Shown here: positions 12,344 through 50,861 of the stretch, piece by piece | Position numbering within the stretch: position 1 is the first letter of the stretch | Layout of the letters: every line of letters starts with the position of its first letter | Sequence record: MK250028.1 | Strand: one strand, 5' to 3' | DNA: 64,000 nt | The notes under the pieces: model-generated | The model's database searches: none | What the model was told of the DNA's origin: nothing | Seen by the model: only the letters and a program-made list of their open reading frames with translations | Made by a program: the position numbers and the translations under genes

Positions 12344-13357
12344 TTACATAATATATTGTAAAAGCATCTTTGTTTCCTCATCAGCTTTTAATTTTGGATA
12401 TGCAGCTCTAAGTATCTGTAATACACGTGTTTCTGTCATTCCATGTTCTTCTGCAACTTGCCATGTATTCTTTTCACCACGTCCATTAATACCATAGCAA
12501 TCACATACAATTTCACCATCTCTTTCACCAAGAACTCTCTTTACATTATCTTCAAGTTCTCTTTCAAGATCAGCGTTATTAAGATTACTATCAGGGTCTT
12601 TAAATGTCCTATTAGCTGTTACATCACCTAATGTTGTTTTAGAATCATCATCATCCCCGTATGATTTATCCAAACTATTTGCACGTGTATTTGCTTCCAT
12701 TGTTTGTGCAAATGTTTCATATTTCAAATCTGGATGTTTCTTTACGAGAACATTATAAATATCATCAATATCAGGTTCATAACCATTCTTATTATATAAT
12801 TGATCCTTGATACGAGCGGCTTCACGAGCAATACTACCCATATTACGGGGAACTGCCATATGTCCACCTACTTCATCAACAGCAGTCATAATTTCTCTAC
12901 GAATATACCAAATAGCATAAGATACAAAACGTACATCTTTACCTGGCAAACTTGGATCATATGTATCTGCTGCTTGCATAAGTCCTATATTTCCATATTG
13001 AATCATATCTTCCTTTGGTATATTAATATTTTTATACTTATTGACAACAGAAATAACAAATGGAAGATTTGCGGACACCAACTTATTCTTTGCTTTTTCA
13101 ACTTCTCTCTTATTATCAGAATGTTGAATAATATCAGCAAGTTTCACTTCATCTGCATGTGATAATTGTTTTTTCTTATTAATAGCATGTAAATATGCAA
13201 TAGTAGACTTTGCTGTATTTTCATCCTGTGTAATAGCAAAATCATCATGCAAATCCATATGCATTCCATTATTAGCTTCATTGAGTTTCTTTCTAATAGT
13301 CTTAGAAACACTCTTCATGATACTCTCATATAATGCTTTCTTTTCATTTAACTTCAT
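12344..13357 (-). CDS. RNA polymerase sigma70-family factor with N-terminal Lys-rich leader
   Basis: Region 2 KLVSANLPFVISVVNKY..DMIQYGNIGLMQAADTYD..RFVSYAIWYIRREI; region 4 LGERDGEIV..YGI..TWQVAEEHGMTETRVLQI. Confidence 0.9.
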   Translation of the reverse strand: MKLNEKKALYESIMKSVSKTIRKKLNEANNGMHMDLHDDFAITQDENTAKSTIAYLHAINKKKQLSHADEVKLADIIQHSDNKREVEKAKNKLVSANLPFVISVVNKYKNINIPKEDMIQYGNIGLMQAADTYDPSLPGKDVRFVSYAIWYIRREIMTAVDEVGGHMAVPRNMGSIAREAARIKDQLYNKNGYEPDIDDIYNVLVKKHPDLKYETFAQTMEANTRANSLDKSYGDDDDSKTTLGDVTANRTFKDPDSNLNNADLERELEDNVKRVLGERDGEIVCDCYGINGRGEKNTWQVAEEHGMTETRVLQILRAAYPKLKADEETKMLLQYIM

Positions 13358-13451
13358 ATCTTGATAAAAATTATTTCAATATTTTAAATATTTATCTTAA
13401 AATAAAAATAGAGAATAGTTATCGCAACTACTCTCTATTTATAATTATCTA

Positions 13452-14009
13452 TTATTCTATATTTAATATTTGTTTAATCTTTACTATGTCATCCTGTGTT
13501 ATACCTGAATAACTATCTATTTTTATAAAGTTATCCTGTTGATATGTCATCATATCATCATCGTCATCTACTATACAATAATCTATTTTCAATTCATCAT
13601 CTTTAAATTTAAAATAATCTTCATCATAAAATTGTTTATAGTTTCGCAAATTTGTATTTCCACTATACATAAGAAAATCATGAATTTCATTTCCTCTTAT
13701 TGAGTGTTCATCATGATATTTTGGTGTTATACCTACTATATATTTAATTAAACATTTCAAATCTTTATACTTATCAAACGCATATTTTGTTGCTTCTAAT
13801 GAAATCTCTCTCCATGACGATGATATAACCAATCTTACATTATAATTCTCACATAATTGTTCTATAAGTTTTACTGCATTTTTGTCTACAAAATGATCAC
13901 CATTTTCTTCATTTATATATTTCTTTCCTTCCTTTGTAAAACACCAATTCGCATATTGTTCAGAATTCAAAACGCCGTCTATGTCTAAAAATAATATTTT
14001 TATATTCAT
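13452..14009 (-). CDS. HAD-family phosphatase (Swiss-Army-Knife RNA-repair type)
   Basis: ILFLDIDGVLNS, LVISSSWR, RGNEI, YCIVDDDDDM motifs. Confidence 0.8.
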   Translation of the reverse strand: MNIKILFLDIDGVLNSEQYANWCFTKEGKKYINEENGDHFVDKNAVKLIEQLCENYNVRLVISSSWREISLEATKYAFDKYKDLKCLIKYIVGITPKYHDEHSIRGNEIHDFLMYSGNTNLRNYKQFYDEDYFKFKDDELKIDYCIVDDDDDMMTYQQDNFIKIDSYSGITQDDIVKIKQILNIE

Positions 14010-14012
14010 TTA

Positions 14013-14336
14013 TTAATCTTCATCAAAATTATCATATATTGAAATCTTATTCTTCCTACGTTCTTTCTTAGGTTCTATACAAGGAAAACAATACTCTCCT
14101 ACATGCTTTATATATCTTTCATTCGTATATGTTGGTTCACCTTTAAAATTAAAATTCCGTTGTTCACCATATGCAATATGTTTCTTTTTCTTCCATTTAA
14201 CAACTTTATCTTTCTGTACTTCTATATCTTGTAAATCCTTATGTTTATTCTTTACTTTAAATTTTTTATCACATTCTACTACAAAACTAGATGAACCCTT
14301 ATTTACTTTATGTGTTTGATGATAACTTCTTGACAT
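14013..14336 (-). CDS. Hypothetical basic protein
   Basis: 107 aa ORF in operon. Confidence 0.6.
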   Translation of the reverse strand: MSRSYHQTHKVNKGSSSFVVECDKKFKVKNKHKDLQDIEVQKDKVVKWKKKKHIAYGEQRNFNFKGEPTYTNERYIKHVGEYCFPCIEPKKERRKNKISIYDNFDED

Positions 14337-14352
14337 AATATAAATTTTTTAT

Positions 14353-14664: not shown

Positions 14665-14668
14665 TTTA

Positions 14669-15418: not shown

Positions 15419-15424
15419 ATATAG

Positions 15425-15803: not shown

Positions 15804-15914
15804 CAATTTACATATGTTATATATGATATTATATTCAAAGTCTATTATTCATATCAAAAATATTTTTAAGAAATAAATATCATAAATGAATCAATAACAT
15901 TTATTATATAATAT

Positions 15915-17129
15915 ATGAATAAGAATTATAACAAACTATATGAAGAAATGATGTCAGATATTTCAGTTATCGTTAAAAAGAAAATAAATGAAGCATATGA
16001 CAATCAGCTTCTCGAAGAATATGGTGCAAAGGATATGTTTAATGATATTATGAAAGAAGCATCAAAAGAAGGTAAAATCTTTTATAAGCATCTTAAATAG
16101 TTTATAATTTATATCATCAAAAAATTACAAGAGACAGATCAATATAAAAAAGCTGAAAAACTTATGAATGCGTATGTTCAGAAAGTACAGAAATATATTG
16201 ATGAACATAAGAAGATTACTCCGAGACGTATGTTGAAAATTACTGTTGCTGTATTGACAATGTATGGAGGTGTTTCAATGATACAAGATTGTAAATAGAT
16301 GATTAAATCTTTATAGGGTAATGTTGAAACTTATGAATAGAAAGTAGAAAATGTACCGGATGAAAAGCAACAAGAAGTAATAGTAGAAGAACCTGAAGAT
16401 TTTGTTGTTGAAGTTAAAGATGAAGCAAAAGAAAAATTAAGTGTCAAGAAAGTATCTACTGAAGATATTAATAATACACCTGAAAAGAAATTTAAGGAAG
16501 ACAAGAATTTCAATTTTAAGTCAAGCAACGAGGCTCGCGAATTTATTAAACATCATGAGTTATGCTTACTTTACCCTTATTACGCAAAACCCGAAGAGGA
16601 AGCGAAAGGAATGGTAACTATTGGTTATGGTCATGTTGTATTGGAATCAGATGGTGAATTATACAAGAAAGTATAGCAATTAAAAAAGAAAGGCTTAATT
16701 AAACAATCATTTGTTACAAAAAATGGTAAAACTATTTTAAACCCTAATCATTGTAAAACCATTATAACAAAGACTGACGCAGATAAATTATTTTAGAAAG
16801 ATATTAAGATTGCTGAATAGCGTGCATATAGAACTATACAAAATATGCCAACAGATGATGATAATGTTAAATATTATATGTTATATAATCAAAAAATAAG
16901 AGATGGATTAACATCATTATGTTATAATGCTGGATAGCTTAAACATGAAAAATATACATTCATAACAAAAGGTCTTGCAAAATCTAGATATGATTATCAA
17001 GCATAGAAAATAAATGCAGGTGATTATAATGTATCCTTTAAATATTTCAAGAATATTAAAGATAATCCTAACAGAAGAAATGAGGAATATAAGTTATTCT
17101 TTATGAACGCAAATAAGTCTATGTCATAA
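15915..17129 (+). CDS. GH24-type phage lysozyme with long N-terminal extension and leader
   Basis: Open under code 15 (9 TAG); FIKHHE..Y..GMVTIGYGH, LTSLCYNAG and RRNEE motifs; ATAAATA at 15872. Confidence 0.8.
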
Positions 17130-17154: not shown

Positions 17155-18507
17155 ATGAAAAAATTATTTGAAGCAAAATAGAAGCCATTAGTTGTTTATA
17201 ATCCTGCTGATATTTTCATGAAATATAATATGAAACCTGGTGATTATGTTTCAATTGCATATGTATCAGATACATTATAGGGAGAAGGTGCTAACCCACT
17301 TGTATCAAAACGTGGTTCAAAAAAGCAATGTTATAATATAAATTCAGAAACGGACGCATAGTTATAGCAATATATTAATGCTATGCCTAATAATAGAATT
17401 AAATAGTTATTAACAGAATTTAGGGAATCTACTAAATATCAAAGCTTTTTAAATGGCACTGCAAAGACAAAAACATGTATGCTTGATTTAACAACAGAAC
17501 ATATACTTAAGATTAGTCATTTAACATGTAACTGGAAAGATTCTAAAGCATTAGCAAAATTTTATAAAAAATAGAATGATGCTGAATTAAATCTCCGTAG
17601 AGAATTTGGTTTTGAAGACGGTTATGATAATAATTATGAACGTTTTTATAATCGTAAAGATGATAAACCGGTACCATTGGATGATAGAACACCAGAAGAA
17701 AAAGAAAACGATAAAAATTGGAGAGATTCTTATAATGGTAGAAATGTAATGCCTCGTATCAAGAAAAATGGTAATGAATATAATATTGCAACTATTATTC
17801 CAGGAATTTATGCAAATTTAAATAAACCTGGTAATATTGCATTACGTTTTGCATATAACAGTCGTTCAAGTCATACAGATTCCGATTATTATTATGTAAA
17901 TGGAGATGGTACATTATTTAAGCTTGATATGGCATTTATTACATTCTTAACATATGCATATAAAAAGAATGCTATGTCTTCTGATAATACCGAAGAAAAG
18001 TCATATGTGTCAGATGAAGAAAAAGAATTTGTTTTAAGATTAAAGCAACTAGTAAAAGATGCACCTAGTACTGCTGAAATGACACTTAAAACAGATAGCA
18101 TATTATTTATGAAATCTACTGCACGTACGTCAAAAAATGCAAAGGTATCAGAAAATGTACCATTTGTTTGGATTAATACTAATGCTGTTGTAAATAAGTA
18201 TGATTTTGTAAATCCTTCTGATTTAAATAATGTTATTAAAAATCTTGTTTATTCTATAGATGATACTAATGTTAATGCGACAATTGAAAATATAAATGTT
18301 AAAGGCAAATCTATTTCAGATTTAGTTTCAACAACTGATGGTAAAGTAACTGCAGATCCGACAGAAGTAAGAAAGAGATTAGGTATTGCAGAAGCATTAA
18401 GATGTATTGCATATAAATATACAATAGAGAAGAAAAAGAAAGCACTTTATGAATCAATAATGAGTAAAGTTGCAAAAACTATTAAAAGAAAGTTACAATT
18501 AATTTAA
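17155..18507 (+). CDS. Hypothetical protein (450 aa) with the leader-like motif at its C-terminus
   Basis: Code-15 extension of track ORF 17677..18507; ends KKKKALYESIMSKVAKTIKRKLQLI. Confidence 0.75.
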
Positions 18508-18555: not shown

Positions 18556-19812
18556 TTAAAATCTTATAAATGAAACTACTTTTGCTTTTACATTTGGATC
18601 TGCAATCTTAAATACCTTGTCAGGATTTACCTATAACATAATATTCGATTCACCTTTATCTGTAACAGAAGAAGTCCAATATCTTCCTGAACCAATAATA
18701 TCTTCAACTTTATTTAATTCTGGTAAAGTTGGCAAATATGCATGTTCTGTAATTTCTTGTTTTACCTCATTAATTTGTGCATCATTCAAACCGGTTAAAT
18801 TCAACTTCTTCATAGGTAATGATTTGGCAGCAGAAGCGGCATTGTTACCGTTATCAGAAAGAATGTTTGTATAGAATTCTCCTTTAACTTCTTCTTGATA
18901 ATAATAATTTGATCCTGCTGTAATCTATAATTTCTAACTAGCACCAACTAATTTCTTCTTGAAGTAATAATCATCATATACACCATTATTTCCTGCATTA
19001 CCTAATGTTACTGTTTCATCACTCATAACCATAAATACAGGTTTCTTATCTAATGTCTTATATGTAGTTAATACGCACTTAGCTATTGCATTCTATGCAT
19101 CATTACTTAATACCAAACCATCCTTTTCATCCCATACTAAGAAATCACCGATATTTGCTTTCCTTAATGAATTACCAACTGTTTTAAAGTATGGTTTCAT
19201 ACTATCATACTTTTCACCTATTGTTATAGGTTCTTCATCAATATCATCTTCCATAGATACATCATCATAATCTGGATAATCATTAGATGTTTCTTCTGAA
19301 TCGATATTATCATCTTCTGAATTATCAACAACAGGTTCTTCATGTTGTTTAATAGAATCATCAAAACCTCTACTTACTTTAACTGGTTCATCAACAACTT
19401 CTGGTTCATCATTTACTGTATCATCTGTTGAAACATCATCATAATCTGGATAATCATGCTTTACAGGTTCTTGTGAAATTTCACCATCAAATTTACCACC
19501 ATTTTCAACATATAATTTCTATATTGATGTTATATCACCACCTGCATTTATATATGCGTCACCAATATTTTTATATGCTTTCAACTTATCAATATCAGAA
19601 ATATTATGTGGACATTCGACTTTCATAGTAAGCAAGCCTGCAACATATTTCTGAAGAAGGATTTCCTTTGAGTCTTTCTTCATAACTCGGGCATCTTCAC
19701 CTAATGTTGAACGCATACGACTTGACATAGAACTCATAGAAGCCCAAATCTTCGGATCTATTGTTCTCTATACACGTGCTTCGTTTAATATATTATTTTT
19801 AAATGTTCTCAT
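18556..19812 (-). CDS. Hypothetical late protein; acidic linker, C-terminal DUF1566-like motif
   Basis: Open under code 15; starts MRTFKNNILNEA; DYPDYDDVS repeated twice; YLPTLPEL..GRYWTSS at C-terminus. Confidence 0.7.
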
Positions 19813-19992
19813 TTAATATTAAAATAATTATTTTACTTATGATATTTATCTTTTATAATAAAATAAGAGATTTAGAATTAAATAATTCAATTATAGCATA
19901 TTCATACAAAAATAGGAGTAAACATAATTATCTTATATTTACTCCTATGTATTTAAATTATTTATTATTCTAAATCAAAAATTGCCTTAAAA

Positions 19993-21777
19993 TTAATTAA
20001 GTTCCAACCAAGTTACACGTTTGTCAAGTTTTGCAACAAGTTTTGCAAGAGCTTCGATTGTCTTCTCATTGTATACATCAATTGATTTCTCTACATCTTC
20101 GCCAGCAAACTGAACAGTATAAGTTGTCTTACCGCCTGTAACATTAAGAGCAAACTCCTCATTAACATCTGCTTCTGCAGGAATTGTAATTGCAACATCG
20201 TTATCAGCAGAATTAACAGCAACTGCCTTATTTTCAACTGTTTGTAAACGTGTTTCGTGATCATTGAATGCATCTGCGATTACCTCTTCATCAGATACTA
20301 ATTCACCAGCAACATCAGCTGCAGTAGCAAGACCTGTTGCATTATTATTTGTACCTGCAACCCACTTACCAGAATTTGTATTCTTTGTAAGACCAACTGA
20401 ACCAAGAGCAGAAGTCTTAACTTCAACTTCATGATTATCAACTGCAACAAAATTCTCAGAACCAGTCTTTACAGAAAGTGTAGGAAGTTCTGTACGTACT
20501 ACTTTAATCTTACCATTTTCCTGTGAAACTGAAGATACATACTTACCTTCTTCTGCTGTATCTGTAACATCAAGTGCTTCAATTGCAAAAGTTGCAGCTT
20601 TTTCTGTAGTCTTGATAGACTTAGCTAAACTTGCAATCTGTGCATCAACCTTATCACCTTCAACAGCAACAGTATCATCAGTTGCAACAATAGCTTCAGC
20701 TGCAACACCATTAGCTTCAAGATTAGCAGAATCAACAGTCAAATTACCATCTGCATCAACATGTACACCAGTTACATATTTACCATCACCTGCAGTTGCA
20801 TCACTTACAGCATGTTTCTTAGCTTCAAGATCTTCCAATCTCTTATGAATACCAGTAGCTGCTGTGCTTGCATCAGACGGTGTACCAATTTCTGCTTTAT
20901 TATGAGCAACATCTGTAATAAGTTCTTTACCGGTTTCAGTTTCATCTACCTCTTTAAACCAATCAATAACTTCAACTACCTTATTGATTACATTATCTTC
21001 ATCAGGATTCTATACATCACCCATAATAGTTTCAATATTAGTGACACGTGTATCTAACTTACCTTCTGCTGTTGTTGCACGATCTGCTTCTTTAGCAATC
21101 TTTCCAAATGCAGTTTCCTAAGTCTTATCATCATCAACAGTGCCAAGAAGTTCTGCGGAAGCAATGTCGTCCTCTGAAATGGTTACTACTTTCTTATCAG
21201 AAACTGCAACCTTTACATGACCAGCTTCTTTCTTTTCTACAGTTGTATAATCAGCATTCTCAAGATCATCAATACGATCTGAAAGTTCACCTTCTGCAGT
21301 TGTAGCACGGTTTGCTTCCTTTGCGATAGCGCCAAATACAGTATCTACATCCTTTGAATCTGCTTTAGTTCCAACAGTTGTTTCCAATGTAGAAACTCTA
21401 TCAGCAAGACTCTTAAGTTTAGCATCAGCTGAAACAGGAATATCAAGAGTCTTAACAGTCTTATCTGTATCAACATAAGAAACAGTAACTGCTGCTTCAG
21501 ATTTAACTTCACCTGTAGTTTCATCAATATTAGCAGGAGTAGATTTAATATTTAAAATCTTTGAAGAAACAACCTTACCACGAGCAACGATAGCGCCTGT
21601 ATTATTTGCTTCATCATAACCAAAATAAATAACACCATCGTCAGGAGTTCCTACTTTTTCAAGTACCTTATCAAGTGTACCATAACCAAAGTTTACTTCT
21701 ACACCATCACCAGCAATAGGAGCACCAAATACAACAGGAGTATTATCCTTCTTTGATTTCTTAATTGTAATAGCCAT
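19993..21777 (-). CDS. Putative virion structural/fibre protein, paralog 1
   Basis: Joins two track ORFs through 2 TAG; AKEA.RATTAEG repeats; ATAAATA upstream. Confidence 0.7.
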
Positions 21778-21896
21778 ATTATTAATTAAGTTTTATATTT
21801 TATTTTTTACTATAATATTTATTCAAAAAAATGGAGAAACATTAATAAAAACGTTTCTCCATTATATTAAAAATTAATTACTAAATTCTGTTAAAA

Positions 21897-23441
21897 TCAG
21901 AGTTCTTCCCATGTCAAAAGACCAGCAAGATATGTGTCATTTGCTTGAAGTTGATTTAATGCGGTATTTAAACCTGTATAGAATGTTTCATTAGCGACAT
22001 CAACTGTTACTTCTGCTTCAACACCGTCCTTACTTGTTGTAAGTTTCAATGTATTGAACTGTTTGTTATCTGCTTTAGGAGCTTCAAGTACAGCATCCTT
22101 TACATATGAAGCTTCAATAGCATTAACAGAAGCATCAGTCTTTTCAAGATGAGCACCAATTGATGTATCTTCAGCTTTAAGTTCATCAAATGTAGACTTG
22201 ATTCCAAGAGAAGTATCAACATATGTTGTTACAGCATCTGCATCAAGTGATACAATACCATTCTCTACCTTAATATACTTACCATCACCCTTGAATGTTT
22301 CAAAAATTTCTGTAAAATCAAGATAAACATCAGAATCTTTCGCAGATTCAGTTTTTGACGGTTTTGTATTAAGAGCAAGGTGTAAATATGAATGACCATA
22401 TTTAATCTTAAATCCAAGACGTGCTTGTTCCCATGTACCATCCTGATTCTCTGACCATGGAAGCATTGCTGCAGATGTTACTTCATCACCGTAATTAACA
22501 GTTGCTGAATTACCCCATTGATCTGAGTCACTACCATATACAATTTCTGGGCCTCCTTCTTTAACATACTTAAATGTACATACATGTGCGCCAGATACCA
22601 AGAAATCCTTAGCAATATTGATCTTATCACCAACAGGAGAAACTGTGCCATCAGGAGCAGTTTGCATTAATTGATATTCAGCTGCATATGTTTTCTCGCC
22701 ATCAGTTTGTTCCATCTGATCATCAGAAACTTTCTTAATTGCATATGTAGAAACTTTAAGTGCATCATCAACAACCTTTACTGTTGTATCATCAACTTTA
22801 ACACCTACTGTATATGTCTGATAATCATTAGCATCCTTTGCAGGAGTTACTTCAATAGCACCATTAGCTGCTTCAGAAACAACATCGCTCTTAAGATGAG
22901 TTTCAATACCGGATACCGAAGTATCTAAACGAGTAGTATCTTCAGTATGATGTGCTTTCAAATCATCAATCTAGTTCTGAAGATTAGATTGAGCTGCTTT
23001 AATCAATTCCTGAACAGTTGCAGTATCAATAATATCAAACTCTGTTGTCCATGTCTTCGTCTTTGTTTGATTATCAACAGGATCTGTTGCACTACCGAAC
23101 CATTTAACCATTACCTTATCAGCAACTTTCTCTGTTGTAGATTCTACATATTTACCTGTTGATGGATCAAAATGTTTCTTTGCAACCTCATTTGTTGTAA
23201 TATCAAGGATCTTAGAAGATACAAGTTGATTACCAACAAATATCATACCGGAATCACCAGCAGCGTCATATACAAAACGTAATTTAGCGTCTGAATCATG
23301 AGCATCATAAATACTAATCACTTTGTCTTCATCAAACGCACCACTCAAAAAATGTACTTCCTTACCTGCAATAGTTGCATCAGCAACCTAATCTGTTAAC
23401 TTTGTTGCTTCACCAGCACCATAAACCATTTTATTTGTCAT
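21897..23441 (-). CDS. Putative virion structural/fibre protein, paralog 2
   Basis: Joins track ORFs through 2 TAG; shares VSSKIL.I block and C-terminal TWEEL with neighbours. Confidence 0.7.
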
Positions 23442-23493
23442 ATTAAATTTTTATAGATTTAATTTTAATATTTATTAATGTTTTAAAAAATTA

Positions 23494-24459
23494 TTATTTA
23501 TATATCTCTTCCCATTTCAATTGGTCTTCCACAATAGTCAATCTATCATTAATAGATGAATCTGTATTCATGAATTCATTTATATGTGAATCATAATCTT
23601 TAAGATCTAATGTAACTGTCTTAATAAGACTACTGTCAAGTGAATGTGTAACATCCTTAATTACTGTACCATCTTTCAATGTCAATACACCTTCAACTAA
23701 ATCAATCTTATCAATAGGTTCAGGCCAAATTTTCGCTTCAATCTTATTTGAATCCTTAACATAATTAAGCTGTTTCAAAACCATGTCAGTTACTTCAATC
23801 TTAGATGAATCTGTTTGTTCTTCATCACCTTTAAATAAAGTGAATGTTTGTTTGAAACCATTCTCATATGTACCTGAATCCTTATGAATTGTATAATTAT
23901 ATTTGCCTTTATCTAAATCATCAATCAACTATACATAAGAAGTATCTATAGTATTGACTCTATCAAAAAGAGTATCAACAGAAGTATCTATAAATGTAAG
24001 ATGTTCATTTATATCTGTAATAGAAGTATCAATAACATTTAATCTTTCATATACATCATTAAATGAAGCATTCATTTTTTCTGTAATAGAAGAATCAAAC
24101 TATTCTAGTTTTTCTTTTACTTCATCTAATTCTTTCTACGAAACAATATTTGTTTTTACAGTTGCAAGTTTACCAGAATCATTTACATATTTGAGAGATA
24201 AAGTTACAACACCATCTACTGAAGCAAGAGATATATCTTTAACTTTAGATGTAAGTTCAAGATCACCCAAGAAGATACCTGTAAGCAATTCTGAATTCTT
24301 AGACTTACCAAAATACAAAGTATGTGGATCCTTATTCTTAGTATTTACAATATCAACATAACGACCTTCTATGAACTCAACTTCATCATGTGGTTTACAT
24401 TTTTTATTTGGGTCAAAAACATGTAATACATGCTGAGGTGGACGTATATCTTTATTCAT
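23494..24459 (-). CDS. Putative virion structural protein, paralog 3
   Basis: Joins track ORFs through 3 TAG; IDTS repeats every 14 aa; C-terminal KWEEI; ATAAATA upstream. Confidence 0.65.
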
Positions 24460-24570
24460 TTAAATATAACATGTTATTTTTATTATTTATTATAAAATAA
24501 AAAATGAGTAATAATTATATATCATTATAATATAAAAGTATTACTCATTTTTCCAATATTTTATTTTCAA

Positions 24571-35796: not shown

Positions 35797-35852
35797 AATT
35801 TTATATACATTTATTATATAGATAAATATTCAAATATTCTTTTTTTAATTTA

Positions 35853-36764
35853 ATGAAATTTAATTTTGATAAATCTATTAATGAAAAATTATCTTTTTTA
35901 TATGAATCATTATTTGATGATGAAACTGATGATATTCTTAATAATGATGAAGAATCTCCGTTGAGTAATGTTTATAATGATGAAAAATAGTTTAATGATT
36001 TTTTAAATGATTGTAATAAATTAGATTTATTTTATAGATAGTGGAATTCTGAAAAATATATAGAAAGATTATAGGAAGAAAAGAAAATTAATCATAGTAA
36101 TGTGATTTATCTTAAACAATTAAGTTTAGCTTTTAAAGATTAGAAATAGTTTGATAAATTTTGTAATATGTTCGATTGTTATCCAACATTAAAATTATAT
36201 ATAGGATATTTAGAATTAGATATGAATTTTGATAGAAATGGAATACCTAATATAAAATTTAATTTTAATAATTTTAATAATACATTTATTGATATTGATA
36301 CTATTTCTATATATGGCGGAATATTTGAAAATTTAGAAGGAATTAATGAAACAATATCATTGAAAAATATTCATTTTAATAATTCTTATGTTAAGTCAAT
36401 AAATGGATTATTAGGAAGCGTTAGAATATTGGATTTTTTATATAATAAACCTATTGAATCCGTTACTGATTGGAGTAATTTATAGAATATGACAAAACTT
36501 TATAGGTTAACCGTTGATTATACAGAGTGGAAATTTATTGGTATAGATCATCTTTTACATTTTAATAATATACCAGAAAACATATTAGATATAAAGGAAG
36601 TTAATTTTATAAATCATGACGCATTTGGTAAATTAAGATATTATAAGAATTATATAAAAAATATGTTTATAGAGGAAAATCCTAATGTTAAAGGTAAACT
36701 TAAATCTAATATTATTAGACAACTTCAAGGTAATTATGAACCTATATTACATGGGAGAAAATAA
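35853..36764 (+). CDS. Late hypothetical protein with LRR-like repeats and a YESLFDD N-terminal motif
   Basis: 303 aa under code 15, joining two track ORFs; ENLEGI, KSINGL, IESVTDW repeats; ATAAATA at 35822. Confidence 0.65.
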
Positions 36765-38617: not shown

Positions 38618-39544
38618 ATGAATAAGAATATTAGACGATTAATAGAATCTCTATTTGATGATGATATATTAGATGATATTAGTAAACCAGATAATTCTGA
38701 TATGATTTTTGATAAAATAAGTTCAACTGATATTGTAAAGCCTTTATTGGATAAGATAGTAGATAGATCCGAGAATAATGATTTAGCAATATTTTTCAAC
38801 GCATATAAAACATTACCATAGTTATCCGAAATATCAAAAAGTTATAAGAATGGAATAAACATAGGTTATGTTAGAATTTCATTATATAAAGGAAATGTAA
38901 AATATTTTAAAGAATTATTTGATATATTATTGGATTATGATATTCATTTTAGTATGAACGTATTAGAATTTTCATTAGAAAATAAAACTGATAAGGTATA
39001 TTCAATTAAAGATTTATTTGATTTTGAAAAATATAAAAGTATTTTAAAAATAAAAGATTTTGTAGTTAGTTATGGGAGATTAAAAGATTTTAAAGGATTT
39101 CCGTCTTATATAGAAAACGAAATTTATTTAAATTGGATTAAAGAAGTAAATTCATTAGAAGGATTTCCAATAACAAAAAATAACTTATCTTTATATTTTA
39201 ATAATAGTGTATTACCGGATGATTGGACCGGATGTCCACATAAATTACAAGAATTAAATTTTCAACCGGAATTACCATCTATGTTATTTAATGTAGAGGA
39301 TGAAGTTAATTCTATTGTTAATAGTATGGGTAATTTAAAAAATATACCATATGATTTAACATTTGAAAGAGATAATATGAGTAGAGGATGTAATCTATAT
39401 ATAGGATGCATGCTTGTAGATCCTTCATGGAAGACAGAGGTTAAAAAAGAAATAAGAAAATATATAGGAAATTGCTTAAAGACTCAATATAAAAATATAA
39501 CTAATTTAAAAAAGAAATTATGTTATAGTATTAAAATGACTTAA
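38618..39544 (+). CDS. Hypothetical protein with LRR-like repeats (paralog-like of 35853)
   Basis: Joins two track ORFs through 1 TAG; IESLFDDD N-terminus; LKDFKGFP/SLEGFP/WTGCP repeats. Confidence 0.65.
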
Positions 39545-42488: not shown

Positions 42489-42761
42489 ATGGAATTAACA
42501 AAGGAATATCTTTTAGATCATGGATATGAAACAAATCATCCTGATCGTGTTTTGTGTCGTTTTTATAAGACTAATAATGAATCTCCTGAGTGGCGAGTTA
42601 GTGTAGAACAGGAATATTTTCCATTGAGTAATAAACTTACATTCAATATTAATTGTTGGAAGTGTAATGAGAGTGGTGCTATTATTAAGCGTTCTTCCAT
42701 AGGATATGCTACAACAGTTGAAGAGTTGAATAATGTTATTGCTCTATGTGGAATCGAGTAA
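42489..42761 (+). CDS. Hypothetical protein
   Basis: 90 aa ORF. Confidence 0.6.
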   Translation: MELTKEYLLDHGYETNHPDRVLCRFYKTNNESPEWRVSVEQEYFPLSNKLTFNINCWKCNESGAIIKRSSIGYATTVEELNNVIALCGIE

Positions 42762-44768: not shown

Positions 44769-45902
44769 ATGTTAAAGTCTATTAAAATACGAATATATCC
44801 TGATAATGTTTAGAAAGAATTTATTTCTAAACAGTTAGGTTGTTGTCGATTTATATATAATAAATTATTGTATTATAAGAAGTCATAGTATGAGTAGAAT
44901 AAACAATCTGTTTCTTTATCACAGTTAGGTAAATATTTAACTAATTTAAAGAAACTAAATGAATATTCTTTTTTAAATGATGTTTATTCTTAGTGTTTAT
45001 AGCAATCAATGTAGGATATGATTAAAGCATATGATAATTTCTTTAAATTACATAATGGTTATCCTAAATTTAAATCAAAGAAAGATACTAAACAAACATG
45101 TAGATTTACAAATACTATATTTAAATTTAAGAAAAAGAAAATTAATGGTAATAGGATAACATTAATTAAATAGTTATAGAATATATTATTTAAATGTTCA
45201 AAAAGAGATGAAATATATTTAAATCATAATCAGGATAAAATCCATTTTATTACTCTTACTAAAACATCTACTGAAAAATATTATCTATCTATTTGTATTG
45301 AGTATAATATTTATAAAAAAGAAAAGTTAGATACAGTAATAGGTCTTGATTTAGGTATTAAAGACTTTATAGTAGATTCTAATGGAAATAGATATGAGAA
45401 TAAACATTTTTATAAAAACCAATAAAAGAAATTAAAGAAATTATAGAGGTTGTTAAGTAAGAAATAGAAAGGAAGTAATAATAGAAATAAAGTTAGAATT
45501 AAATTAGCTAACGTTTATGAAAAAATAGCTAATCAAAGAAGCACATATTTACATCAAATTAGTTCAAAATTAGTTAACGAGAACCAAGTTATCTGTATTG
45601 AAGATTTAAATGTAAATGGTATGATGTCTAATCATAAATTAGCTAAATCTATATAGGACTTAAGTTTCTATGAATTTAGACGTTAGTTAGAATATAAATG
45701 TAGATAGAATGGAAGACAATTAATGATTATAGATAGATTTTATCCTTCTTCTAAAACATGTCACAATTGTGGATATATTTATAAAAGTTTAAAATTAAAT
45801 GAACGCGACTGGATATGTCCACATTGTAGATCTCTAATAGATAGAGATTATAATGCTTCATTAAATATTTTAACTGAAGGATTAAGACAAATTAATTTAT
45901 AA
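44769..45902 (+). pseudogene. tnpB: TnpB copy 2, interrupted by one TAA
   Basis: Same 1134-nt length as copy 1; 13 TAG; TAA at 45423-45425 where copy 1 has GAA; RuvC residues present. Confidence 0.85.
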
Positions 45903-46557: not shown

Positions 46558-47130
46558 TTAATATTCATCATCGTCATCCCATTCATCATCTGAATCATCA
46601 TAATCTTCCTCTTCATCATCAAAATTAGAATCAGAAAGATAAATTTCTTCTATAACTACTTGATTAACTTTGAATACCATAAGTCCTTCTGAAAATTCAA
46701 GTTCAATATCAATTTCACCATCTTCATTTGCAGGGAATATTTGAATACTTTCATCTTGTTTTAATTCAATTTCAGGTTTACAATAGGCAATATCAAAAAT
46801 ACCTATTGTACCAGAATCTACATCATATTTTTGATTTGTCATAGAATCATATGTACCATCGCCATATTGAGTTCCTTGAATAATACCTATAACTTCCTCA
46901 TCATTTTCAAGAATTCCATCAGGATATTTCTTTGCACCCCATACATTATCATAAATATCTTCTGTTAAACAATAACATGGATCACCAATAACAAGTGATT
47001 CTACATTTGTTAATGTTACATAATAACGTCCACTTGTTTGTGTATATTTCTCATTAATTGATTTCTTTACAGATTTTGATACTGATTTCATTATACTTTC
47101 ATATAATGATTTCTTTTGTTTATTATTCAT
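46558..47130 (-). CDS. Leader-bearing hypothetical protein (GDPCY family, DUF4241-like)
   Basis: N-terminus KKSLYESIMKSVSKSVKKSINE; LVIGDPCY, YGDGTY, VDSGTIG; acidic tail. Confidence 0.7.
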   Translation of the reverse strand: MNNKQKKSLYESIMKSVSKSVKKSINEKYTQTSGRYYVTLTNVESLVIGDPCYCLTEDIYDNVWGAKKYPDGILENDEEVIGIIQGTQYGDGTYDSMTNQKYDVDSGTIGIFDIAYCKPEIELKQDESIQIFPANEDGEIDIELEFSEGLMVFKVNQVVIEEIYLSDSNFDDEEEDYDDSDDEWDDDDEY

Positions 47131-47160: not shown

Positions 47161-47170
47161 AGTATTTATC
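47161..47170 (-). promoter_or_regulatory. Class III (T4-late-like) promoter ATAAATA
   Basis: ATAAATA about 25-45 nt upstream of ATGs at 13357, 15915, 19812, 21777, 24459, 26778, 35853, 47130, 50861, 54147, 62428. Confidence 0.65.
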
Positions 47171-47245: not shown

Positions 47246-47548
47246 TTATCCATCATATCCGTATTTACCGAATACATGAACAATTTCACCGCTTTTAGTT
47301 GTATAAGATTTATCATAAGATTCTAGATCATAATCACCGAAGTAATCATCATATGATTTATATCTCCAGCTATCTTCTGTAATATCTTCCTCTGATATAG
47401 AATCTTTTGAAACTAATTTATTATGATCTCTATCAAGAACATATGTTCCATTTTTCCATCCATTATATTCATCATCTGATGCAAATGTCAATGAATGTGT
47501 AGAACTTGAGTTAGTTTCAAATACACTTTTCCTTACTTGAATTTTCAT
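47246..47548 (-). CDS. FETNSSSTH-motif protein D
   Basis: MKIQVRKSVFETNSSSTHSL. Confidence 0.8.
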   Translation of the reverse strand: MKIQVRKSVFETNSSSTHSLTFASDDEYNGWKNGTYVLDRDHNKLVSKDSISEEDITEDSWRYKSYDDYFGDYDLESYDKSYTTKSGEIVHVFGKYGYDG

Positions 47549-47566
47549 TATATATTATTATATATT

Positions 47567-48130
47567 TTAATTACTCTTATAGTATTCCCATGATTTTCCA
47601 AAATTTGGACAATCCAACTCTTCATCACTATTATCATTACCTGTTGATACATAACTATTATAATCAAACAAATAATTCATAAGTTTTTTATCATTACTTA
47701 TAACATCTTCGAGAAAATCACCTACTTCATTTCCATGATCTATATAACCACTATCTTCTTCATCATCATTATTCATAAATTTAATATAAGTATATTCACT
47801 ACCATCATCATATTTATGAACTTTAACTTTCATATTAGCAGCATATGGAAATAGTGCTTTAATATTATGTTTTGCAAGAATATCTGTAATTGATTTAATT
47901 GCATTATTTACTTTATCAATATTATTCCAATAACAACTTGTAATTGCTTCCCATAGATATTCTGCTTTAGTAGCAGTGTCAAAATGAATATCAAAATCCC
48001 ATCCAAATTCGCCTTTACCAAATATTACTTTATCAGGAAATTCATTAATATCAGATTTCTTAATAATGGAAATAGAATGTGTTGAACTTGAATTTGTTTC
48101 AAATACACTACGTCTAACTTGTACTTTCAT
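47567..48130 (-). CDS. FETNSSSTH-motif protein C
   Basis: MKVQVRRSVFETNSSSTHSI; GYIDH and TGNDN later in the protein. Confidence 0.8.
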   Translation of the reverse strand: MKVQVRRSVFETNSSSTHSISIIKKSDINEFPDKVIFGKGEFGWDFDIHFDTATKAEYLWEAITSCYWNNIDKVNNAIKSITDILAKHNIKALFPYAANMKVKVHKYDDGSEYTYIKFMNNDDEEDSGYIDHGNEVGDFLEDVISNDKKLMNYLFDYNSYVSTGNDNSDEELDCPNFGKSWEYYKSN

Positions 48131-48154
48131 TTTATTTTATAAAATTAATAATTA

Positions 48155-48820
48155 TTAAATAATATAAATCTTTGGTTTATAATAAGGTGCATAAGCTTCA
48201 TCGGCATAAGTAATAGTATTATTATCATCCATAATATTCCAAAAATATTCATTGAATTTTTCTACTGTTAACCAACCACCATTTTCACCAATATTTTCAA
48301 AAAACTTTTTATTTGTATCTGTATTTTTTGTAAATTCAACATATGAACCATATTCAAGTTGATTCTTAACATCTTGAATATCATACTCATGTTGTTTTGC
48401 AATCTTCTTTATATACTCTACAAACTTCTTATATACTTCTGTATCTTCTAACCAATCATCATGATTATCCTCAAAATAATGGTTTCTATATTCAGCTCTA
48501 TTATAATCTTCAATATAATATGCATTATTATTTAATTCCATTGCAATATATTGAAGTTTAGCAACCCAATTATTAATGATATAATAAATATTAGTCATTT
48601 CATCACCATTTTCGAAATCAATACCACGAAGAATAAATGTATGTTCTATAATATAATCCTTTGGATTAAATATACCACAGTCCATATTATCCTTATATTG
48701 CTCAAAAATAGCTTTATATACAATATCTTTTACATCATTAATTGTTCCATGTGTAATTTGTAAAGAATGTGTTGAACTTGAGTTCGTTTCAAACACCCCT
48801 CTTCTAATTTGTACTTTCAT
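48155..48820 (-). CDS. FETNSSSTH-motif protein B
   Basis: MKVQIRRGVFETNSSSTHSL. Confidence 0.8.
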   Translation of the reverse strand: MKVQIRRGVFETNSSSTHSLQITHGTINDVKDIVYKAIFEQYKDNMDCGIFNPKDYIIEHTFILRGIDFENGDEMTNIYYIINNWVAKLQYIAMELNNNAYYIEDYNRAEYRNHYFEDNHDDWLEDTEVYKKFVEYIKKIAKQHEYDIQDVKNQLEYGSYVEFTKNTDTNKKFFENIGENGGWLTVEKFNEYFWNIMDDNNTITYADEAYAPYYKPKIYII

Positions 48821-49320
48821 TAATCTGGTTCTATATAAATTTTTGTATGTTCATGATTTAAATCTTTATCGTAATTGAAATAATCCCTATCAAATATGTC
48901 AACTTTTGATTCATCATTAAAAATATATTCTAACAATAATTGCTCAAAGTCTTCATCTTTTTCATCAAATAGGTCATTAAATACATCTTCATACCCATAG
49001 CTATAATTATCATATTCTCCCGTTTCTGAAATAAGGAATACACAATTAATATCATATTTAGATAATACTTTTTCAATGCGATATTTAGTAGACATAAAAT
49101 GAGATAGATTATCACTAAATGTCATATAGTCAAATAAGTTATCTAATCTATCTTGAAAATGATTACCTTTATCTCTTTCTCGCCAAGGTAAACCAAATTT
49201 AAGTGTAGTTCCTGCATATAATTTAAGAATTTTATCATCTACAGGTTTTGTACATATAGTTAATGTATGTGTTGAACTTGAATTAGTTTCAAATACACTA
49301 TGCCTTATTTGAATTTTCAT
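48820..49320 (-). CDS. FETNSSSTH-motif protein A
   Basis: MKIQIRHSVFETNSSSTHTL; TAATG coupling to the next gene. Confidence 0.8.
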   Translation of the reverse strand: MKIQIRHSVFETNSSSTHTLTICTKPVDDKILKLYAGTTLKFGLPWRERDKGNHFQDRLDNLFDYMTFSDNLSHFMSTKYRIEKVLSKYDINCVFLISETGEYDNYSYGYEDVFNDLFDEKDEDFEQLLLEYIFNDESKVDIFDRDYFNYDKDLNHEHTKIYIEPD

Positions 49321-49343
49321 AATTTTCCTATTGTTTTATATTA

Positions 49344-50228
49344 TTACTTATTATATTTGTTTCTAATAAATTGAAACATTTCATCCATAGTCTTATCACC
49401 TATATGGAATCTTTCTTTAGAAATTGAATTCTTTGCAAATTCACCCTTTACTAAATCAATATAAAATGTATAACCACCATCATCTCCCATGTAGAATTCA
49501 TTCCATTCATCATCGGACATAATACGTTTTACATCAAGTTGCTTAATTGCTAGATTATCAAAACTTAATACTTTAAACTTCTCCGTAATTTCCTTAAGAT
49601 TATCAAAGATATATTTACGATTTGTTTCAATCATATCATTATGTTCCTTATGGAAATTAACTCCTCGTTGTAAATCTTTATATCCAAGGAGAAGAACTTT
49701 AAGATTATGATTTGCCAACTTATTAATATCATCTTCTGTAAGAATACCTACAATAGTATGAAGAACTGTATTAGGAATACTATTCATTTTCTGGATAAGT
49801 TCATCAGATGGTTTTACCAACGAAACACCAATACCATATACGAGTTTATTATCAGACCAATCCTTTAATTTATCATAATTATCAAAGAATTGTTTTTGAT
49901 TTACTGTAATATTAGCAAATACTTTCTTCGATTTAAGAAAATTAAGGAACTTATCAAGATCAGGGTGATCAAGGTCATTACCATTCAATGCAATTTCTGT
50001 ATATGGATGAAGTGTATTTATAAATGGATATGTAAACAAGTTACCATGTTTCCCATGTGGCGAACATCCTTCATAACAAAACGCACAGCCTATATTACAC
50101 TTATCTGTTAATTTACAGTCTACATTTTCACTATATGCTGGAATAAACTCATCATCATTTGTACGACGAATTTTTGTTCCATCACCCAAAATTGTTACGA
50201 TATAATTACCATTCTTATAACTTGGCAT
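49344..50228 (-). CDS. Radical SAM enzyme
   Basis: CNIGCAFC (CxxxCxxC), EIALNG, ANITVN; no Cys-rich SPASM domain visible. Confidence 0.9.
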   Translation of the reverse strand: MPSYKNGNYIVTILGDGTKIRRTNDDEFIPAYSENVDCKLTDKCNIGCAFCYEGCSPHGKHGNLFTYPFINTLHPYTEIALNGNDLDHPDLDKFLNFLKSKKVFANITVNQKQFFDNYDKLKDWSDNKLVYGIGVSLVKPSDELIQKMNSIPNTVLHTIVGILTEDDINKLANHNLKVLLLGYKDLQRGVNFHKEHNDMIETNRKYIFDNLKEITEKFKVLSFDNLAIKQLDVKRIMSDDEWNEFYMGDDGGYTFYIDLVKGEFAKNSISKERFHIGDKTMDEMFQFIRNKYNK

Positions 50229-50358
50229 AATTTCTTTATTTTAAAAAATTAATAAATTTAAATTTAATATCACGAAGATACATATTTTGTTTATATATAA
50301 AAAAGAAAAATAGAGAATATCTAACATTAATTAGTAAATATTCTCTATTTTTAAAAAT

Positions 50359-50861
50359 TTATAATTCTATTATTTCTAATTTATTATAAGGTATTATTCC
50401 ATTATAAAAATATGTTGGATCTCTTTCATCTTCAGATTCTTCATCATTTTCATCATATATGTTGTTTTGATCTAAAGAAAGTTTATTTAAATCAATATCA
50501 GATGTTTTAATTCTAAATACAATAATTTCTAATTCTTTTTCATATCTATCTTCATATTCTTCTGCAAATTCTTCAAATTCATCAGAGCTATCTAAATATG
50601 ATTCTGCAACATATTCATCTGTTGCTAAAAATACCCCGTACTTTATATTTTCATATGGAGTATTTTCATAATTCCAAAATCGTTTCTTTGGTACTTTTGC
50701 ACCTAACCCATTTTTCTTTATTGAACGCAAATAACAAGATGGAGTTGCATGATAAAAATATTTATATTATAATTGATTGTTTCATTAATTGATTTCTTTA
50801 CAGATTTAGAAATAGATTTTATTATATTTTCATATAATGTTTTCTTTTGTATAGAATTCAT
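50359..50861 (-). pseudogene. Leader-bearing ADP-ribosyltransferase-like protein, 1-nt frameshift after the leader
   Basis: ATG 50861 gives MNSIQKKTLYENIIKSISKSVKKSINE; the domain YFYHATPS..LRSIKKNGL..GVFLATDEYVAESY is in the -1 frame. Confidence 0.6.

What the first reader, a model, noticed from the sequence alone, without database searches (positions are those of the whole stretch)
12344..50861. Shared Lys-rich leader on unrelated proteins: candidate capsid-targeting signal for an injected protein set
Seen: KKALYESIMKSVSKTIRKKLNE-A (sigma70), NKLYEEMMSDISVIVKKKINE-A (lysozyme), KKSLYESIMKSVSKSVKKSINE-K (46558) and KKTLYENIIKSISKSVKKSINE-T (ART-like). Shorter relatives occur at 19812 (MRTFKNNILNE-A), 35853 and 38618. 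All but 38618 follow an ATAAATA promoter. Established: T4 internal proteins and Alt carry N-terminal capsid-targeting peptides removed by gp21 after (I/L)-X-E. Inference: this is a portable module that loads regulatory and enzymatic cargo into the head, with cleavage at (L/I)NE.
Basis: partly seen in the sequence, partly recalled or inferred. Interest (0 to 1): 0.85.

Follow-up and report, generated by a model that had tools for sequence, protein, structure and literature searches.

The report
Shared protein leader of Lak megaphages
A 27-residue N-terminal tag ending in Leu/Ile-Asn-Glu sits on a sigma factor, a lysozyme and many unrelated small proteins of the uncultivated Lak megaphage, and it most likely works like phage T4's capsid-targeting peptide: it loads these proteins into the head and is then cut off by the head protease, though this is not yet shown.

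Summary
The window is Prevotella megaphage Lak-B1/B9, and TAG is read as sense. Five copies of the leader lie in the window. Four are N-terminal: sigma70, lysozyme, the 46558 gene and a broken gene at 50861. Lak-B1 holds about 16 copies, and Lak-A1 and Lak-C1 hold 10-11 each. A profile finds 922 protein clusters in public data, nearly all with the leader at residues 1-28. Conservation stops sharply after (L/I)-N-E.

Several facts support the T4-like reading:
- Lak-B1 encodes a gp21-family prohead protease (Pfam S77). That protein carries seven [LIVM]NE sites.
- The gp23-family capsid protein has K-L-N-E|D at residue 61-64.
- Three paralogues keep the NE junction while the leader varies from 11 to 23 residues.
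- Leader genes share an ATAAATA box that also marks TAG-containing (late) genes.

Packaging and cleavage are inferred, not shown.

The finding is a new variant of a known kind. The masked stretch at 35312-35796 was not read and touches no leader copy.

The parts
12344..13357 (-). Sigma-70 family gene (337 aa, no TAG). Leader is residues 1-27 (13277-13357) and ends K-K-L-N-E|A.
   Evidence: The orthologues in Lak-A1/C1 keep the leader and LNE and carry 4 in-frame TAG codons. All but 1 (N-truncated) of the 120 listed orthologues keep the leader, and all 120 keep (L/I)NE.
13389..13395 (-). ATAAATA box, 38 nt before the sigma ATG.
   Evidence: The same box is present in Lak-A1/C1.
15915..17129 (+). 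Lysozyme-domain gene (404 aa when 9 in-frame TAG codons are read as sense). Leader is residues 1-26 (15915-15992) and ends K-K-I-N-E|A.
   Evidence: The leader is conserved in Lak-A1.
15873..15879 (+). ATAAATA box, 42 nt before the lysozyme ATG.
17155..18507 (+). Gene of unknown function (450 aa, 6 TAG). A copy of the module forms its last 25 residues (18430-18504). It has no NE. I-A-E|A lies 33 residues from the end.
   Evidence: The C-terminal copy and I-T-E|A are conserved in Lak-A1.
18556..19812 (-). Gene of 418 aa (6 TAG) with a short 11-residue leader MRTFKNNILNE|A. It is a paralogue of two Lak-B1 proteins that carry the long leader, and the NE junctions align.
   Evidence: ATAAATA box at 19843-19849.
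46558..47130 (-). Gene of 190 aa (no TAG; PHROG 20074, unknown function; acidic tail). Leader is residues 1-27 (47050-47130) and ends K-S-I-N-E|K.
   Evidence: ATAAATA box at 47163-47169.
50718..50861 (-). Leader ORF of 47 codons. The leader (50781-50861) ends K-S-I-N-E|T, and the ORF then runs into TAA at 50718-50720.
   Evidence: ATAAATA box at 50891-50897.
50359..50766 (-). It overlaps the leader ORF in another frame, so the gene is broken by a frameshift between 50766 and 50721.
   Evidence: The state is the same in the Lak-B1 record, and Lak-A1/C1 have no orthologue. No Pfam or PHROG hit. There is an Arr-like lead only.
35853..36764 (+). Gene of 303 aa (6 TAG). S-I-N-E|K lies at residues 8-11, followed by the second motif LYESLFDDETDD. 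ATAAATA box at 35822-35828.
   Evidence: It lies 57 nt to the right of the masked stretch.

Best explanation
**Proposal.** The leader has the consensus M-x4-KK-x-LYESIMK-x-V(S/A)KTVKK-x-(L/I)NE. I read it as the Lak megaphage counterpart of the T4 capsid-targeting sequence.

**Inferred steps.**
1. Leader genes are transcribed from an ATAAATA-type late promoter.
2. The leader, probably one helix, binds a component of the prohead core or scaffold, so the protein is built into the prohead.
3. The gp21-family prohead protease then cuts after the Glu of (L/I)-N-E. It cuts the capsid protein at K-L-N-E(64) and itself at a cluster of xNE sites in the same way.
4. The mature cargo stays in the head and is ejected into Prevotella with the DNA.

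**Cargo.** It includes a sigma-70 factor, a lysozyme-domain protein and a fast-evolving set of small proteins of unknown function.

**Shown versus inferred.** Shown here: the motif, its position, its spread, the sharp end of conservation, the protease and capsid families, the xNE sites and the promoter box. Inferred: binding, cleavage, packaging and ejection.
For: 1. **Portable module.**
   - Lak-B1 has 11 copies at E <= 4e-6 and 5 weaker ones. Lak-A1 and Lak-C1 have 10-11 each.
   - Among 1.84e9 representative proteins, 922 clusters match at E <= 1e-3. Nearly all of the best 150 carry the leader at residues 1-28.
   - Cargo parts are unrelated. Only 9 Pfam families were found among the 150, each in one member.
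2. **Sharp boundary**. P3 is L or I in 148/150, P2 is N in 141/150 and P1 is E in 148/150. P1' is mostly small or polar (S 41, A 31, D 15, N 14). Nothing is conserved after that.
3. **Selection acts on the peptide, not the DNA.** Sigma and the 46558 gene share 16 of 22 residues, and 9 of those use different codons, including AGT versus TCA for Ser.
4. **T4-type machinery.**
   - Pfam Peptidase_S77 scores 56 bits, above the cut-off.
   - Pfam Gp23 capsid protein scores 68 bits.
   - T4 gp21 cuts after Glu, removes the 65-residue gp23 propeptide and removes the 10-20-residue CTS of internal proteins and Alt (PMC5694885, PMC3012670).
5. **Matching sites.**
   - The capsid protein has A-K-L-N-E|D at 60-64, and it is the only [LIVM]NE in its first 140 residues.
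   - The 581-aa protease-plus-acidic-tail protein has 7 [LIVM]NE sites, the most enriched of 136 ORFs (Poisson p = 2e-4). Five lie at residue 19 and at 178-228, just after the protease domain. Six of the seven are kept in Lak-A1/C1.
6. **Conserved junction.** Three paralogues share a mature domain that begins right after NE. Their leaders are 11, 21 and 23 residues long.
7. **Position bias.** [LI]NE occurs in the first 35 residues about 3.8 times more often than elsewhere (p = 4e-6).
8. **Shared regulation.**
   - An ATAAATA box lies 27-52 nt upstream of 9/10 leader genes versus 19/152 other genes (p = 4e-7).
   - Box genes hold TAG more often (16/24 versus 31/101, p = 0.002).
   - The sigma orthologue in Lak-A1/C1 has 4 in-frame TAG codons, so it must be translated when TAG is read as sense.
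9. **The leader is not a general feature of Lak sigma factors.** A second sigma-70 gene of Lak-B1 lacks it.
Against: - There is no proteomic, N-terminal or structural evidence. Lak phages are uncultivated.
- The leader is two to three times longer than the T4 CTS and far more conserved. It shows no sequence likeness to MKTYQEFIAE.
- About half of the Lak-B1 leader genes hold no TAG, unlike most structural genes. Late-only expression is therefore not shown.
- One conserved copy is C-terminal and lacks NE.
- The enrichment of xNE in the protease gene is only modestly significant after correction for 136 ORFs.
- The hydrophobic moment of the leader is unremarkable: 22% of shuffles reach it.
- The K-A-I-Y-E-S stretch in the capsid propeptide is not a significant match to the leader profile (-0.5 bits).
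- The AlphaFold helix for residues 3-28 has low confidence (pLDDT about 40).
- The protease-leader complex could not be computed.
Confidence: 0.6

Rival explanations
1. The leader is a cleaved pro-sequence whose main role is not head targeting. It keeps the proteins inactive or tethered, for example at the membrane, until a protease removes it. The model is pro-sigma-E and pro-sigma-K of Bacillus sporulation.
For: - The boundary at (L/I)NE is sharp.
- One carrier is a sigma factor and one is a lysozyme. Both could harm the infection if active too early.
- The leader is about as long as the 27-residue pro-sequence of pro-sigma-E (own knowledge).
Against: - Most carriers are small proteins with no known fold and no obvious need for latency.
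- The matching KLNE site in the capsid protein and the xNE cluster in the prohead protease tie the cut to head maturation. In T4 that cutting happens inside the prohead (PMC5694885).
- The C-terminal copy has no NE.
Confidence: 0.15
2. The leader is an uncleaved interaction helix. It brings many proteins to one common partner, such as a phage chaperone, the tail or ejection apparatus, host RNA polymerase, DNA or membrane. In this reading the NE is part of the binding surface.
For: - Residues along the whole 27-mer are very strongly conserved (L, Y, E, S, I, M, V, K). That is more than a protease site needs.
- A conserved C-terminal copy without NE exists.
- The leader has a net charge of +4 to +6.
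Against: - Almost all copies sit at the extreme N-terminus.
- Conservation ends at exactly the same residue, Glu, in 148/150 carriers, and P1' is small.
- The same xNE motif occurs in the capsid protein and the protease.
- A paralogue has only an 11-residue remnant that still keeps ILNE.
Confidence: 0.15
3. The shared segment is a by-product of DNA-level spread of a promoter-plus-start cassette by recombination or gene conversion. The peptide itself has no function.
For: - The leader travels together with an ATAAATA box at a fixed distance.
- The copies at 46558 and 50861 are 88% identical in DNA.
Against: - Between other pairs, more than half of the conserved residues use different codons, and DNA identity is only 55-70%.
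- The spacer between box and ATG is not conserved.
- 922 clusters keep the peptide.
- The sigma orthologues changed 8 of 20 leader residues yet kept the hydrophobic pattern and LNE.
Confidence: 0.04

Closest known systems
T4 capsid-targeting sequence (CTS) of internal proteins IPI/II/III and Alt, removed by prohead protease gp21
   Same: - It is an N-terminal tag that is the only conserved part of otherwise diverse proteins (PMC3012670).
- It is cut after Glu in an (L/I)-x-E context: ITE-6 and LTE-619 in Alt, and MKTYQEFIAE in the internal proteins (PMC5694885; bioRxiv 10.1101/2021.01.19.427310).
- The protease family (S77) and capsid family (Gp23) are the same in the Lak genome.
- The capsid propeptide is of similar length: 65 residues in T4, and a candidate 64 here.
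- Alt also has a C-terminal propeptide. That parallels the C-terminal copy with I-(A/T)-E|A upstream.
   Different: - The leader is 26-28 residues rather than about 10, and it is much more strongly conserved.
- P2 is almost always Asn.
- There are about 10-16 carriers per genome, and hundreds of cargo families across the lineage.
- Cargo includes a sigma-70 factor and a lysozyme-domain protein.
- No experimental evidence exists.
Propeptides of head and ejection proteins of giant phages phiKZ, 201phi2-1 and SPN3US (protease family S80, cut at A/S/G-x-E)
   Same: - These are giant phages with many internal ejection proteins, including transcription machinery (virion RNA polymerase subunits).
- The propeptides are cut after Glu and are thought to target proteins into the prohead.
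- Paralogues share N-termini (PMC5694885).
   Different: - Those propeptides are long (more than 100 residues) and are not one shared portable sequence.
- The cleavage motif differs (A-x-E).
- Lak has the T4-type S77 protease.
Pro-sigma-E and pro-sigma-K of Bacillus subtilis (own knowledge)
   Same: A sigma-70 family factor is made with an N-terminal pro-sequence of about 20-27 residues, and this must be removed.
   Different: - Those pro-sequences are specific to the sigma factor and are cut by the membrane proteases SpoIIGA or SpoIVFB.
- Here the same leader sits on many unrelated proteins.
Encapsulation peptides of bacterial microcompartments and cargo-loading peptides of encapsulins (own knowledge)
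   Same: A short helical tag, N- or C-terminal, is enough to load unrelated cargo into a protein shell. Encapsulins share the HK97 fold with phage capsids.
   Different: - Those tags are not cleaved.
- There is no sequence relation.
- They act in cellular compartments, not virions.

Membership tests
T4-type CTS / gp21-processed head proteins | The phage encodes a gp21-family (Peptidase_S77) prohead protease. | tested here: met
   PF03420 at Lak-B1 497276-497593 (-), 56.4 bits, above the cut-off. The ORF is 581 aa, with the protease domain followed by an acidic tail.
T4-type CTS / gp21-processed head proteins | The major capsid protein is of the gp23 family and has an N-terminal propeptide ending in (L/I)-x-E. 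| tested here: inconclusive
   PF07068 scores 67.8 bits. A-K-L-N-E|D lies at residues 60-64, before the part that matches the Pfam model. The cut itself cannot be tested. phmmer against PDB found no T4 chain to align.
T4-type CTS / gp21-processed head proteins | A short N-terminal peptide ending in (L/I)-x-E is the only part shared by otherwise unrelated proteins. | tested here: met
   The length is 26-28 residues rather than 10-20.
T4-type CTS / gp21-processed head proteins | The carriers are present in virions with the leader removed, and the tag is enough to package foreign proteins. | not testable with these tools
   No Lak isolate or virion proteome exists. The Lak papers do not mention the leader.
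T4-type CTS / gp21-processed head proteins | Sequence relation to the T4 CTS (MKTYQEFIAE). | tested here: inconclusive
   I see no likeness for the long leader. The short forms MRTFKNNILNE and MKFNFDKSINE resemble it in length and layout only. Ten residues are too few for a test of homology.
Sigma-70 family | Regions 2, 3 and 4 are present. | tested here: met
   Region 2 scores 44.5 bits, above the cut-off. Region 3 scores 24.6 against a cut-off of 25.3. Regions 1.2 and 4 are weak. PHROG 351 matches at 6e-43.
   No Pfam or PHROG hit. The language-model search gives Arr (PF12120) only at rank 25, with a score of 0.94 and 135 shared features. The AlphaFold model has pLDDT 40.6 and is unusable.
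Pro-sigma-E/K type pro-sigma factors | A dedicated membrane protease (SpoIIGA or SpoIVFB type) is encoded with the sigma factor. | not tested
   I did not search for one. The leader is shared with many proteins that are not sigma factors, which already sets it apart.

The most novel reading that the evidence does not exclude
Lak megaphage virions carry a ready-made sigma-70 factor. It is made late as a pro-protein, loaded by the leader and trimmed by the prohead protease. It is then injected with the DNA and redirects Prevotella RNA polymerase from the first minute. This would be the first packaged sigma factor. The same leader would mark a hypervariable arsenal of more than 900 families of injected effectors, readable directly from metagenomes.
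Probability: 0.35. Interest if true: 0.8.

Novelty: new variant of a known kind. Interest (0 to 1): 0.65.

Why it matters
Lak phages are among the largest known phages. They are common in human and animal guts, have never been cultivated, and most of their genes have no known function.

A recognisable loading tag would allow the set of proteins that travel in the virion and enter the host to be read from sequence alone. Per genome that means a sigma factor, a wall-degrading enzyme and a dozen fast-evolving unknowns, and across metagenomes hundreds of families. These are the natural candidates for host take-over and counter-defence functions.

It would also extend the T4 capsid-targeting principle to a distant lineage with a much longer and better-defined tag. 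It predicts the cleavage specificity of the Lak head protease as (L/I)-N-E followed by a small residue. Finally, it offers a possible tag for packaging foreign proteins.

All of this can be tested with simple co-expression experiments, even without a cultured phage.

Tried and rejected
- **AlphaFold of the 135-aa 'ART-like' frame** gave pLDDT 40.6, too poor for a fold search.
- **AlphaFold of the sigma protein** with 16 orthologues gave pLDDT 52.7. The leader is one helix (residues 3-28) followed by a coil, but at low confidence.
- **phmmer of the Lak capsid protein against PDB** found nothing, so there is no residue-level alignment to T4 gp23.
- **tblastn of a 34-aa leader against 50,697 phage records** found only the nine Lak-B orthologues. 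The method is too insensitive for such a short query.
- **Leader profile against the capsid propeptide**: the K-A-I-Y-E-S likeness is not significant, at -0.5 bits.
- **Hydrophobic moment**: not above shuffles, so I do not call the leader a classic amphipathic helix.
- **Genomic context of database hits**: contigs are mostly 1-10 kb and uninformative.
- **Read laying on 50300-50950**: only contigs were available. The one identical piece covers 50532-50746 without any difference. A related strain's contig shows 4 extra letters behind 50762, but the same sample has adapter sequence at that spot. It remains undecided whether the frameshift is real.
- **Rejected: RiPP-type leader.** The cargo includes 300-400-aa enzymes.
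- **Rejected: Sec, lipoprotein or T9SS export signal.** The leader has no hydrophobic core and no Cys, and it is basic and helical.
- **No whole genome** was held for the window.

Full report
**Identity of the window**

The window has 22-35% G+C. Window 19993-24459 is 100% identical to Prevotella phage Lak-B1 (MK250020.1, 205973-210439) and Lak-B9. It is 74% identical to Lak-A1, Lak-A2 and Lak-C1. Window position 1 therefore corresponds to Lak-B1 position 185981.

Many long frames are open only if TAG is read as sense. The lysozyme frame 15915-17129 holds nine in-frame TAG codons and no other stop. TAG recoding in Lak phages is published (PMC6784885). I wrote the residue as Q by convention and did not test which residue it is.

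**The masked stretch**

The N run lies at 35312-35796. The offset between window and Lak-B1 coordinates is 185980 on the left and on the right. The run therefore has the true length and the flanks are collinear. I did not read the letters in any other copy.

No leader copy lies within 11 kb of it. The one feature it limits is gene 35853, which starts 57 nt to its right. That gene's ATAAATA box (35822-35828) is still readable. The ORF listed at 35289-35810 (-) is an artefact of the N letters.

**The observation**

A profile of the copies, run against the six-frame translation of the window, gives five hits at E = 8e-14 to 9e-12. The next hit is at E = 0.04.

It forms the last 25 residues of gene 17155-18507, just downstream of the lysozyme gene, and it ends in L-Q-L-I-stop with no NE.

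The carriers check out as follows:
- Sigma-70 is confirmed (Pfam regions 2 and 3; PHROG 351 at 6e-43).
- The lysozyme domain is confirmed (PF00959, PHROG 7).
- The 46558 protein belongs to PHROG 20074, of unknown function.

The fourth carrier is broken. Its leader ORF runs into TAA at 50718-50720. A 135-codon frame (50362-50766) overlaps it in another frame. The Lak-B1 record has the same state, and Lak-A1 and Lak-C1 have no orthologue.

The "ART-like" label has no Pfam or PHROG support. There is only a weak language-model lead to rifampin ADP-ribosyltransferase (Arr) at rank 25, and the structure model is unusable. I left the gene as two pieces.

**How far the module reaches**

- In Lak-B1 the profile finds 16 places at E <= 0.1, of which 11 are at E <= 4e-6.
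- Lak-A1 and Lak-C1 have 10-11 places each.
- In the fetched loci the module starts 1-10 residues after a Met and ends in LNE or INE. It is followed by unrelated sequence.
- A profile search of 1.84 billion representative proteins gives 922 clusters at E <= 1e-3. Nearly all of the best 150 carry the module at residues 1-28. The few internal placements have a Met directly before the module, which points to a mis-called start.
- In these 150, the nearly invariant positions are M1, K6, K7, L9, Y10, E11, S12, I13, M14, V17, K19, V21, K22, N26 and E27.
- Around the junction, P3 is L or I in 148 and P2 is N in 141. P1 is E in 148, and P1' is S, A, D, N or G in 110. After that there is no conservation.
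- Only nine Pfam families occur among the 150, each in one member. The Lak-B1 carriers outside the window have no Pfam or PHROG function.
- In IMG/VR the module occurs in 30 loci, most on contigs of 120-673 kb. The same upstream box is usually present.
- No paper in the library contains the motif string, and the Lak papers do not mention it.

**Selection acts on the peptide**

Sigma and the 46558 gene share 16 of 22 leader residues. Nine of these use different codons, including AGT versus TCA for Ser. DNA identity between most pairs is 55-70%.

The sigma orthologues of Lak-A1 and Lak-C1 are 76% identical overall and nearly identical just after the junction. Their leader has changed at 8 of 20 positions, yet it keeps the hydrophobic pattern and LNE. 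All but one (N-terminally truncated) of the 120 listed orthologues keep the leader, and all 120 keep (L/I)NE. P1' varies among A, D, G and N.

**Link to head maturation**

Lak-B1 encodes a T4 gp21-family prohead protease (Pfam Peptidase_S77, 56 bits, above the cut-off). It also encodes a T4 gp23-family capsid protein (Pfam Gp23, 68 bits).

In T4, gp21 cuts after Glu. It removes a 65-residue propeptide from gp23. It removes the 10-20-residue capsid-targeting sequences from the internal proteins and from Alt (ITE-6, and also LTE-619 at the C-terminal side). It also degrades the core proteins (PMC5694885). The internal proteins are a diverse set that share only the CTS (PMC3012670). The CTS sequence is MKTYQEFIAE (bioRxiv 10.1101/2021.01.19.427310).

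The Lak capsid protein has A-K-L-N-E|D at residues 60-64. This is the only [LIVM]NE in its first 140 residues, and it lies ahead of the part that matches the Pfam model.

The protease gene product is 581 aa: a protease domain followed by a very acidic tail. It has seven [LIVM]NE sites, at 19, 178, 190, 217, 226, 538 and 557. This is the strongest enrichment among 136 ORFs (p = 2e-4, about 0.03 after correction). Four of the sites are followed by Ser, which is the commonest P1' of the leaders. Six of the seven are kept in Lak-A1 and Lak-C1.

Over all ORFs at hand, [LI]NE is 3.8 times more frequent in the first 35 residues than elsewhere (p = 4e-6).

**The junction is a functional boundary**

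Gene 18556-19812 starts MRTFKNNILNE|A. It is a paralogue of two Lak-B1 proteins that carry the long leader. The three align from the residue after NE through a conserved domain of about 110 residues. Their leaders are 11, 21 and 23 residues long.

Gene 35853 has S-I-N-E at residues 8-11. After that it carries a different motif, L-Y-E-S-L-F-D-D-E. It shares this motif with 38618 and with a DUF285 protein near the protease gene. This second motif has nine copies in Lak-B1. Gene 38618 has no NE and is not a relative of the leader.

**Regulation**

Counted over the window and the loci, 9 of 10 leader genes have the box 27-52 nt upstream, against 19 of 152 other genes (p = 4e-7). Genes with the box hold in-frame TAG more often (16/24 against 31/101, p = 0.002).

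In the window the box also precedes the large TAG-rich genes at 19993-26778 and at 54147-56420. The box resembles the T4 late promoter TATAAATA (own knowledge). That it acts as a late promoter here is an inference.

About half of the Lak-B1 leader genes have no TAG, so they could also be read early. The sigma gene has none in Lak-B1 but four in Lak-A1 and Lak-C1.

**The C-terminal copy**

The copy is conserved in Lak-A1 and again ends in K-R-K-L-Q-L-I-stop. I-A-E|A (I-T-E|A in Lak-A1) lies 33 residues from the end. This suggests that the helix is the docking element, and that NE is needed only when the tag has to be removed from an N-terminus. A cut at I-x-E|A would parallel the C-terminal processing of T4 Alt. 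That is speculation.

**Other checks**

Lak-B1 has a second sigma-70 gene (311 aa) without the leader. The AlphaFold model of the sigma protein puts residues 3-28 in one helix followed by a coil, but at low confidence. The hydrophobic moment is not above shuffles.

**Verdict**

The best explanation is a capsid-targeting propeptide cut by the S77 prohead protease after (L/I)NE (confidence 0.6).

The rivals are:
- a cleaved pro-sequence with another role (0.15)
- an uncleaved interaction helix (0.15)
- a passive promoter-plus-start cassette (0.04)

The principle is known from T4. The tag, its length and conservation, its scale and its cargo (a sigma-70 factor and a lysozyme) are new. No paper in the searched library holds the motif string, and the three Lak papers I read do not mention the leader. 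I rate it a new variant of a known kind, with interest 0.65.

Noticed in passing
window 35853-35966 and 38618-38707; Lak-B1 501694-501780 and six more places: There is a second shared N-terminal motif, M-x6-L-x-ESLFDDD-xx-DD, which is acidic. It has nine copies in Lak-B1 at E <= 9e-5. One is on a DUF285-repeat protein 4 kb from the prohead protease gene. Its function is unknown, and it may be a second sorting signal.
   Followed up: partly
window, whole: TAG is read as sense in roughly a third of the genes, including lysozyme, the genes at 19993-26778, 54147-57521 and the TnpB genes. Other genes hold none. The window is 100% identical to Lak-B1/B9.
   Followed up: yes
window 31363-32502 (-) and 44769-45902 (+): There are two copies of an IS605-type TnpB gene (OrfB_IS605, Cas12f1-like TNB and HTH domains). 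Their N-termini are nearly identical, and each holds 8-9 in-frame TAG codons, so the transposon gene is adapted to the phage's code. The second copy is split into pieces.
   Followed up: partly
window 47246-49320 (-): Four tandem paralogues of 100-221 aa share the N-terminus MK(I/V)Q(V/I)R(R/H/K)(S/G)VFETNSSSTHS. They lie directly downstream of a gene matching PHROG 16999 ('Fe-S oxidoreductase', 49344-50228). None of the five has a Pfam hit.
   Followed up: partly
Lak-B1 42628-42732 (-) (locus L004): One leader gene has TAA at codon 5 (MNKN-stop-KKSLYES...), where other leaders have Q or K. It is either a nonsense mutation or it starts at an internal Met.
   Followed up: no
Lak-B1 502259-503512 (+) (L008 6259-7512): A 417-aa protein lies 5 kb from the protease gene. 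Its N-terminus is weakly leader-like and ends A-L-S-E|A, followed by an acidic stretch. It has weak PHROG matches to tape-measure and head proteins. It is a candidate core or ejection protein.
   Followed up: partly
window 24571-26778 (-): A 735-aa protein carries pyruvyl-transferase and glycosyltransferase domains and 15 TAG codons, behind an ATAAATA box. This fusion is mentioned in PMC8346664.
   Followed up: partly
window 8550-10130 (-), 51962-52459 (+), 36938-38047 (+): Three other annotated genes: nicotinamide phosphoribosyltransferase (PHROG 448, 6e-176), a protein matching PHROG 1238 ('phosphoheptose isomerase'), and a homing endonuclease with 11 TAG codons.
   Followed up: no
Lak-B1 339645-340580 (+) (L063 646-1581): A second sigma-70 family gene (311 aa) has an acidic N-terminus and no leader.
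   Followed up: partly
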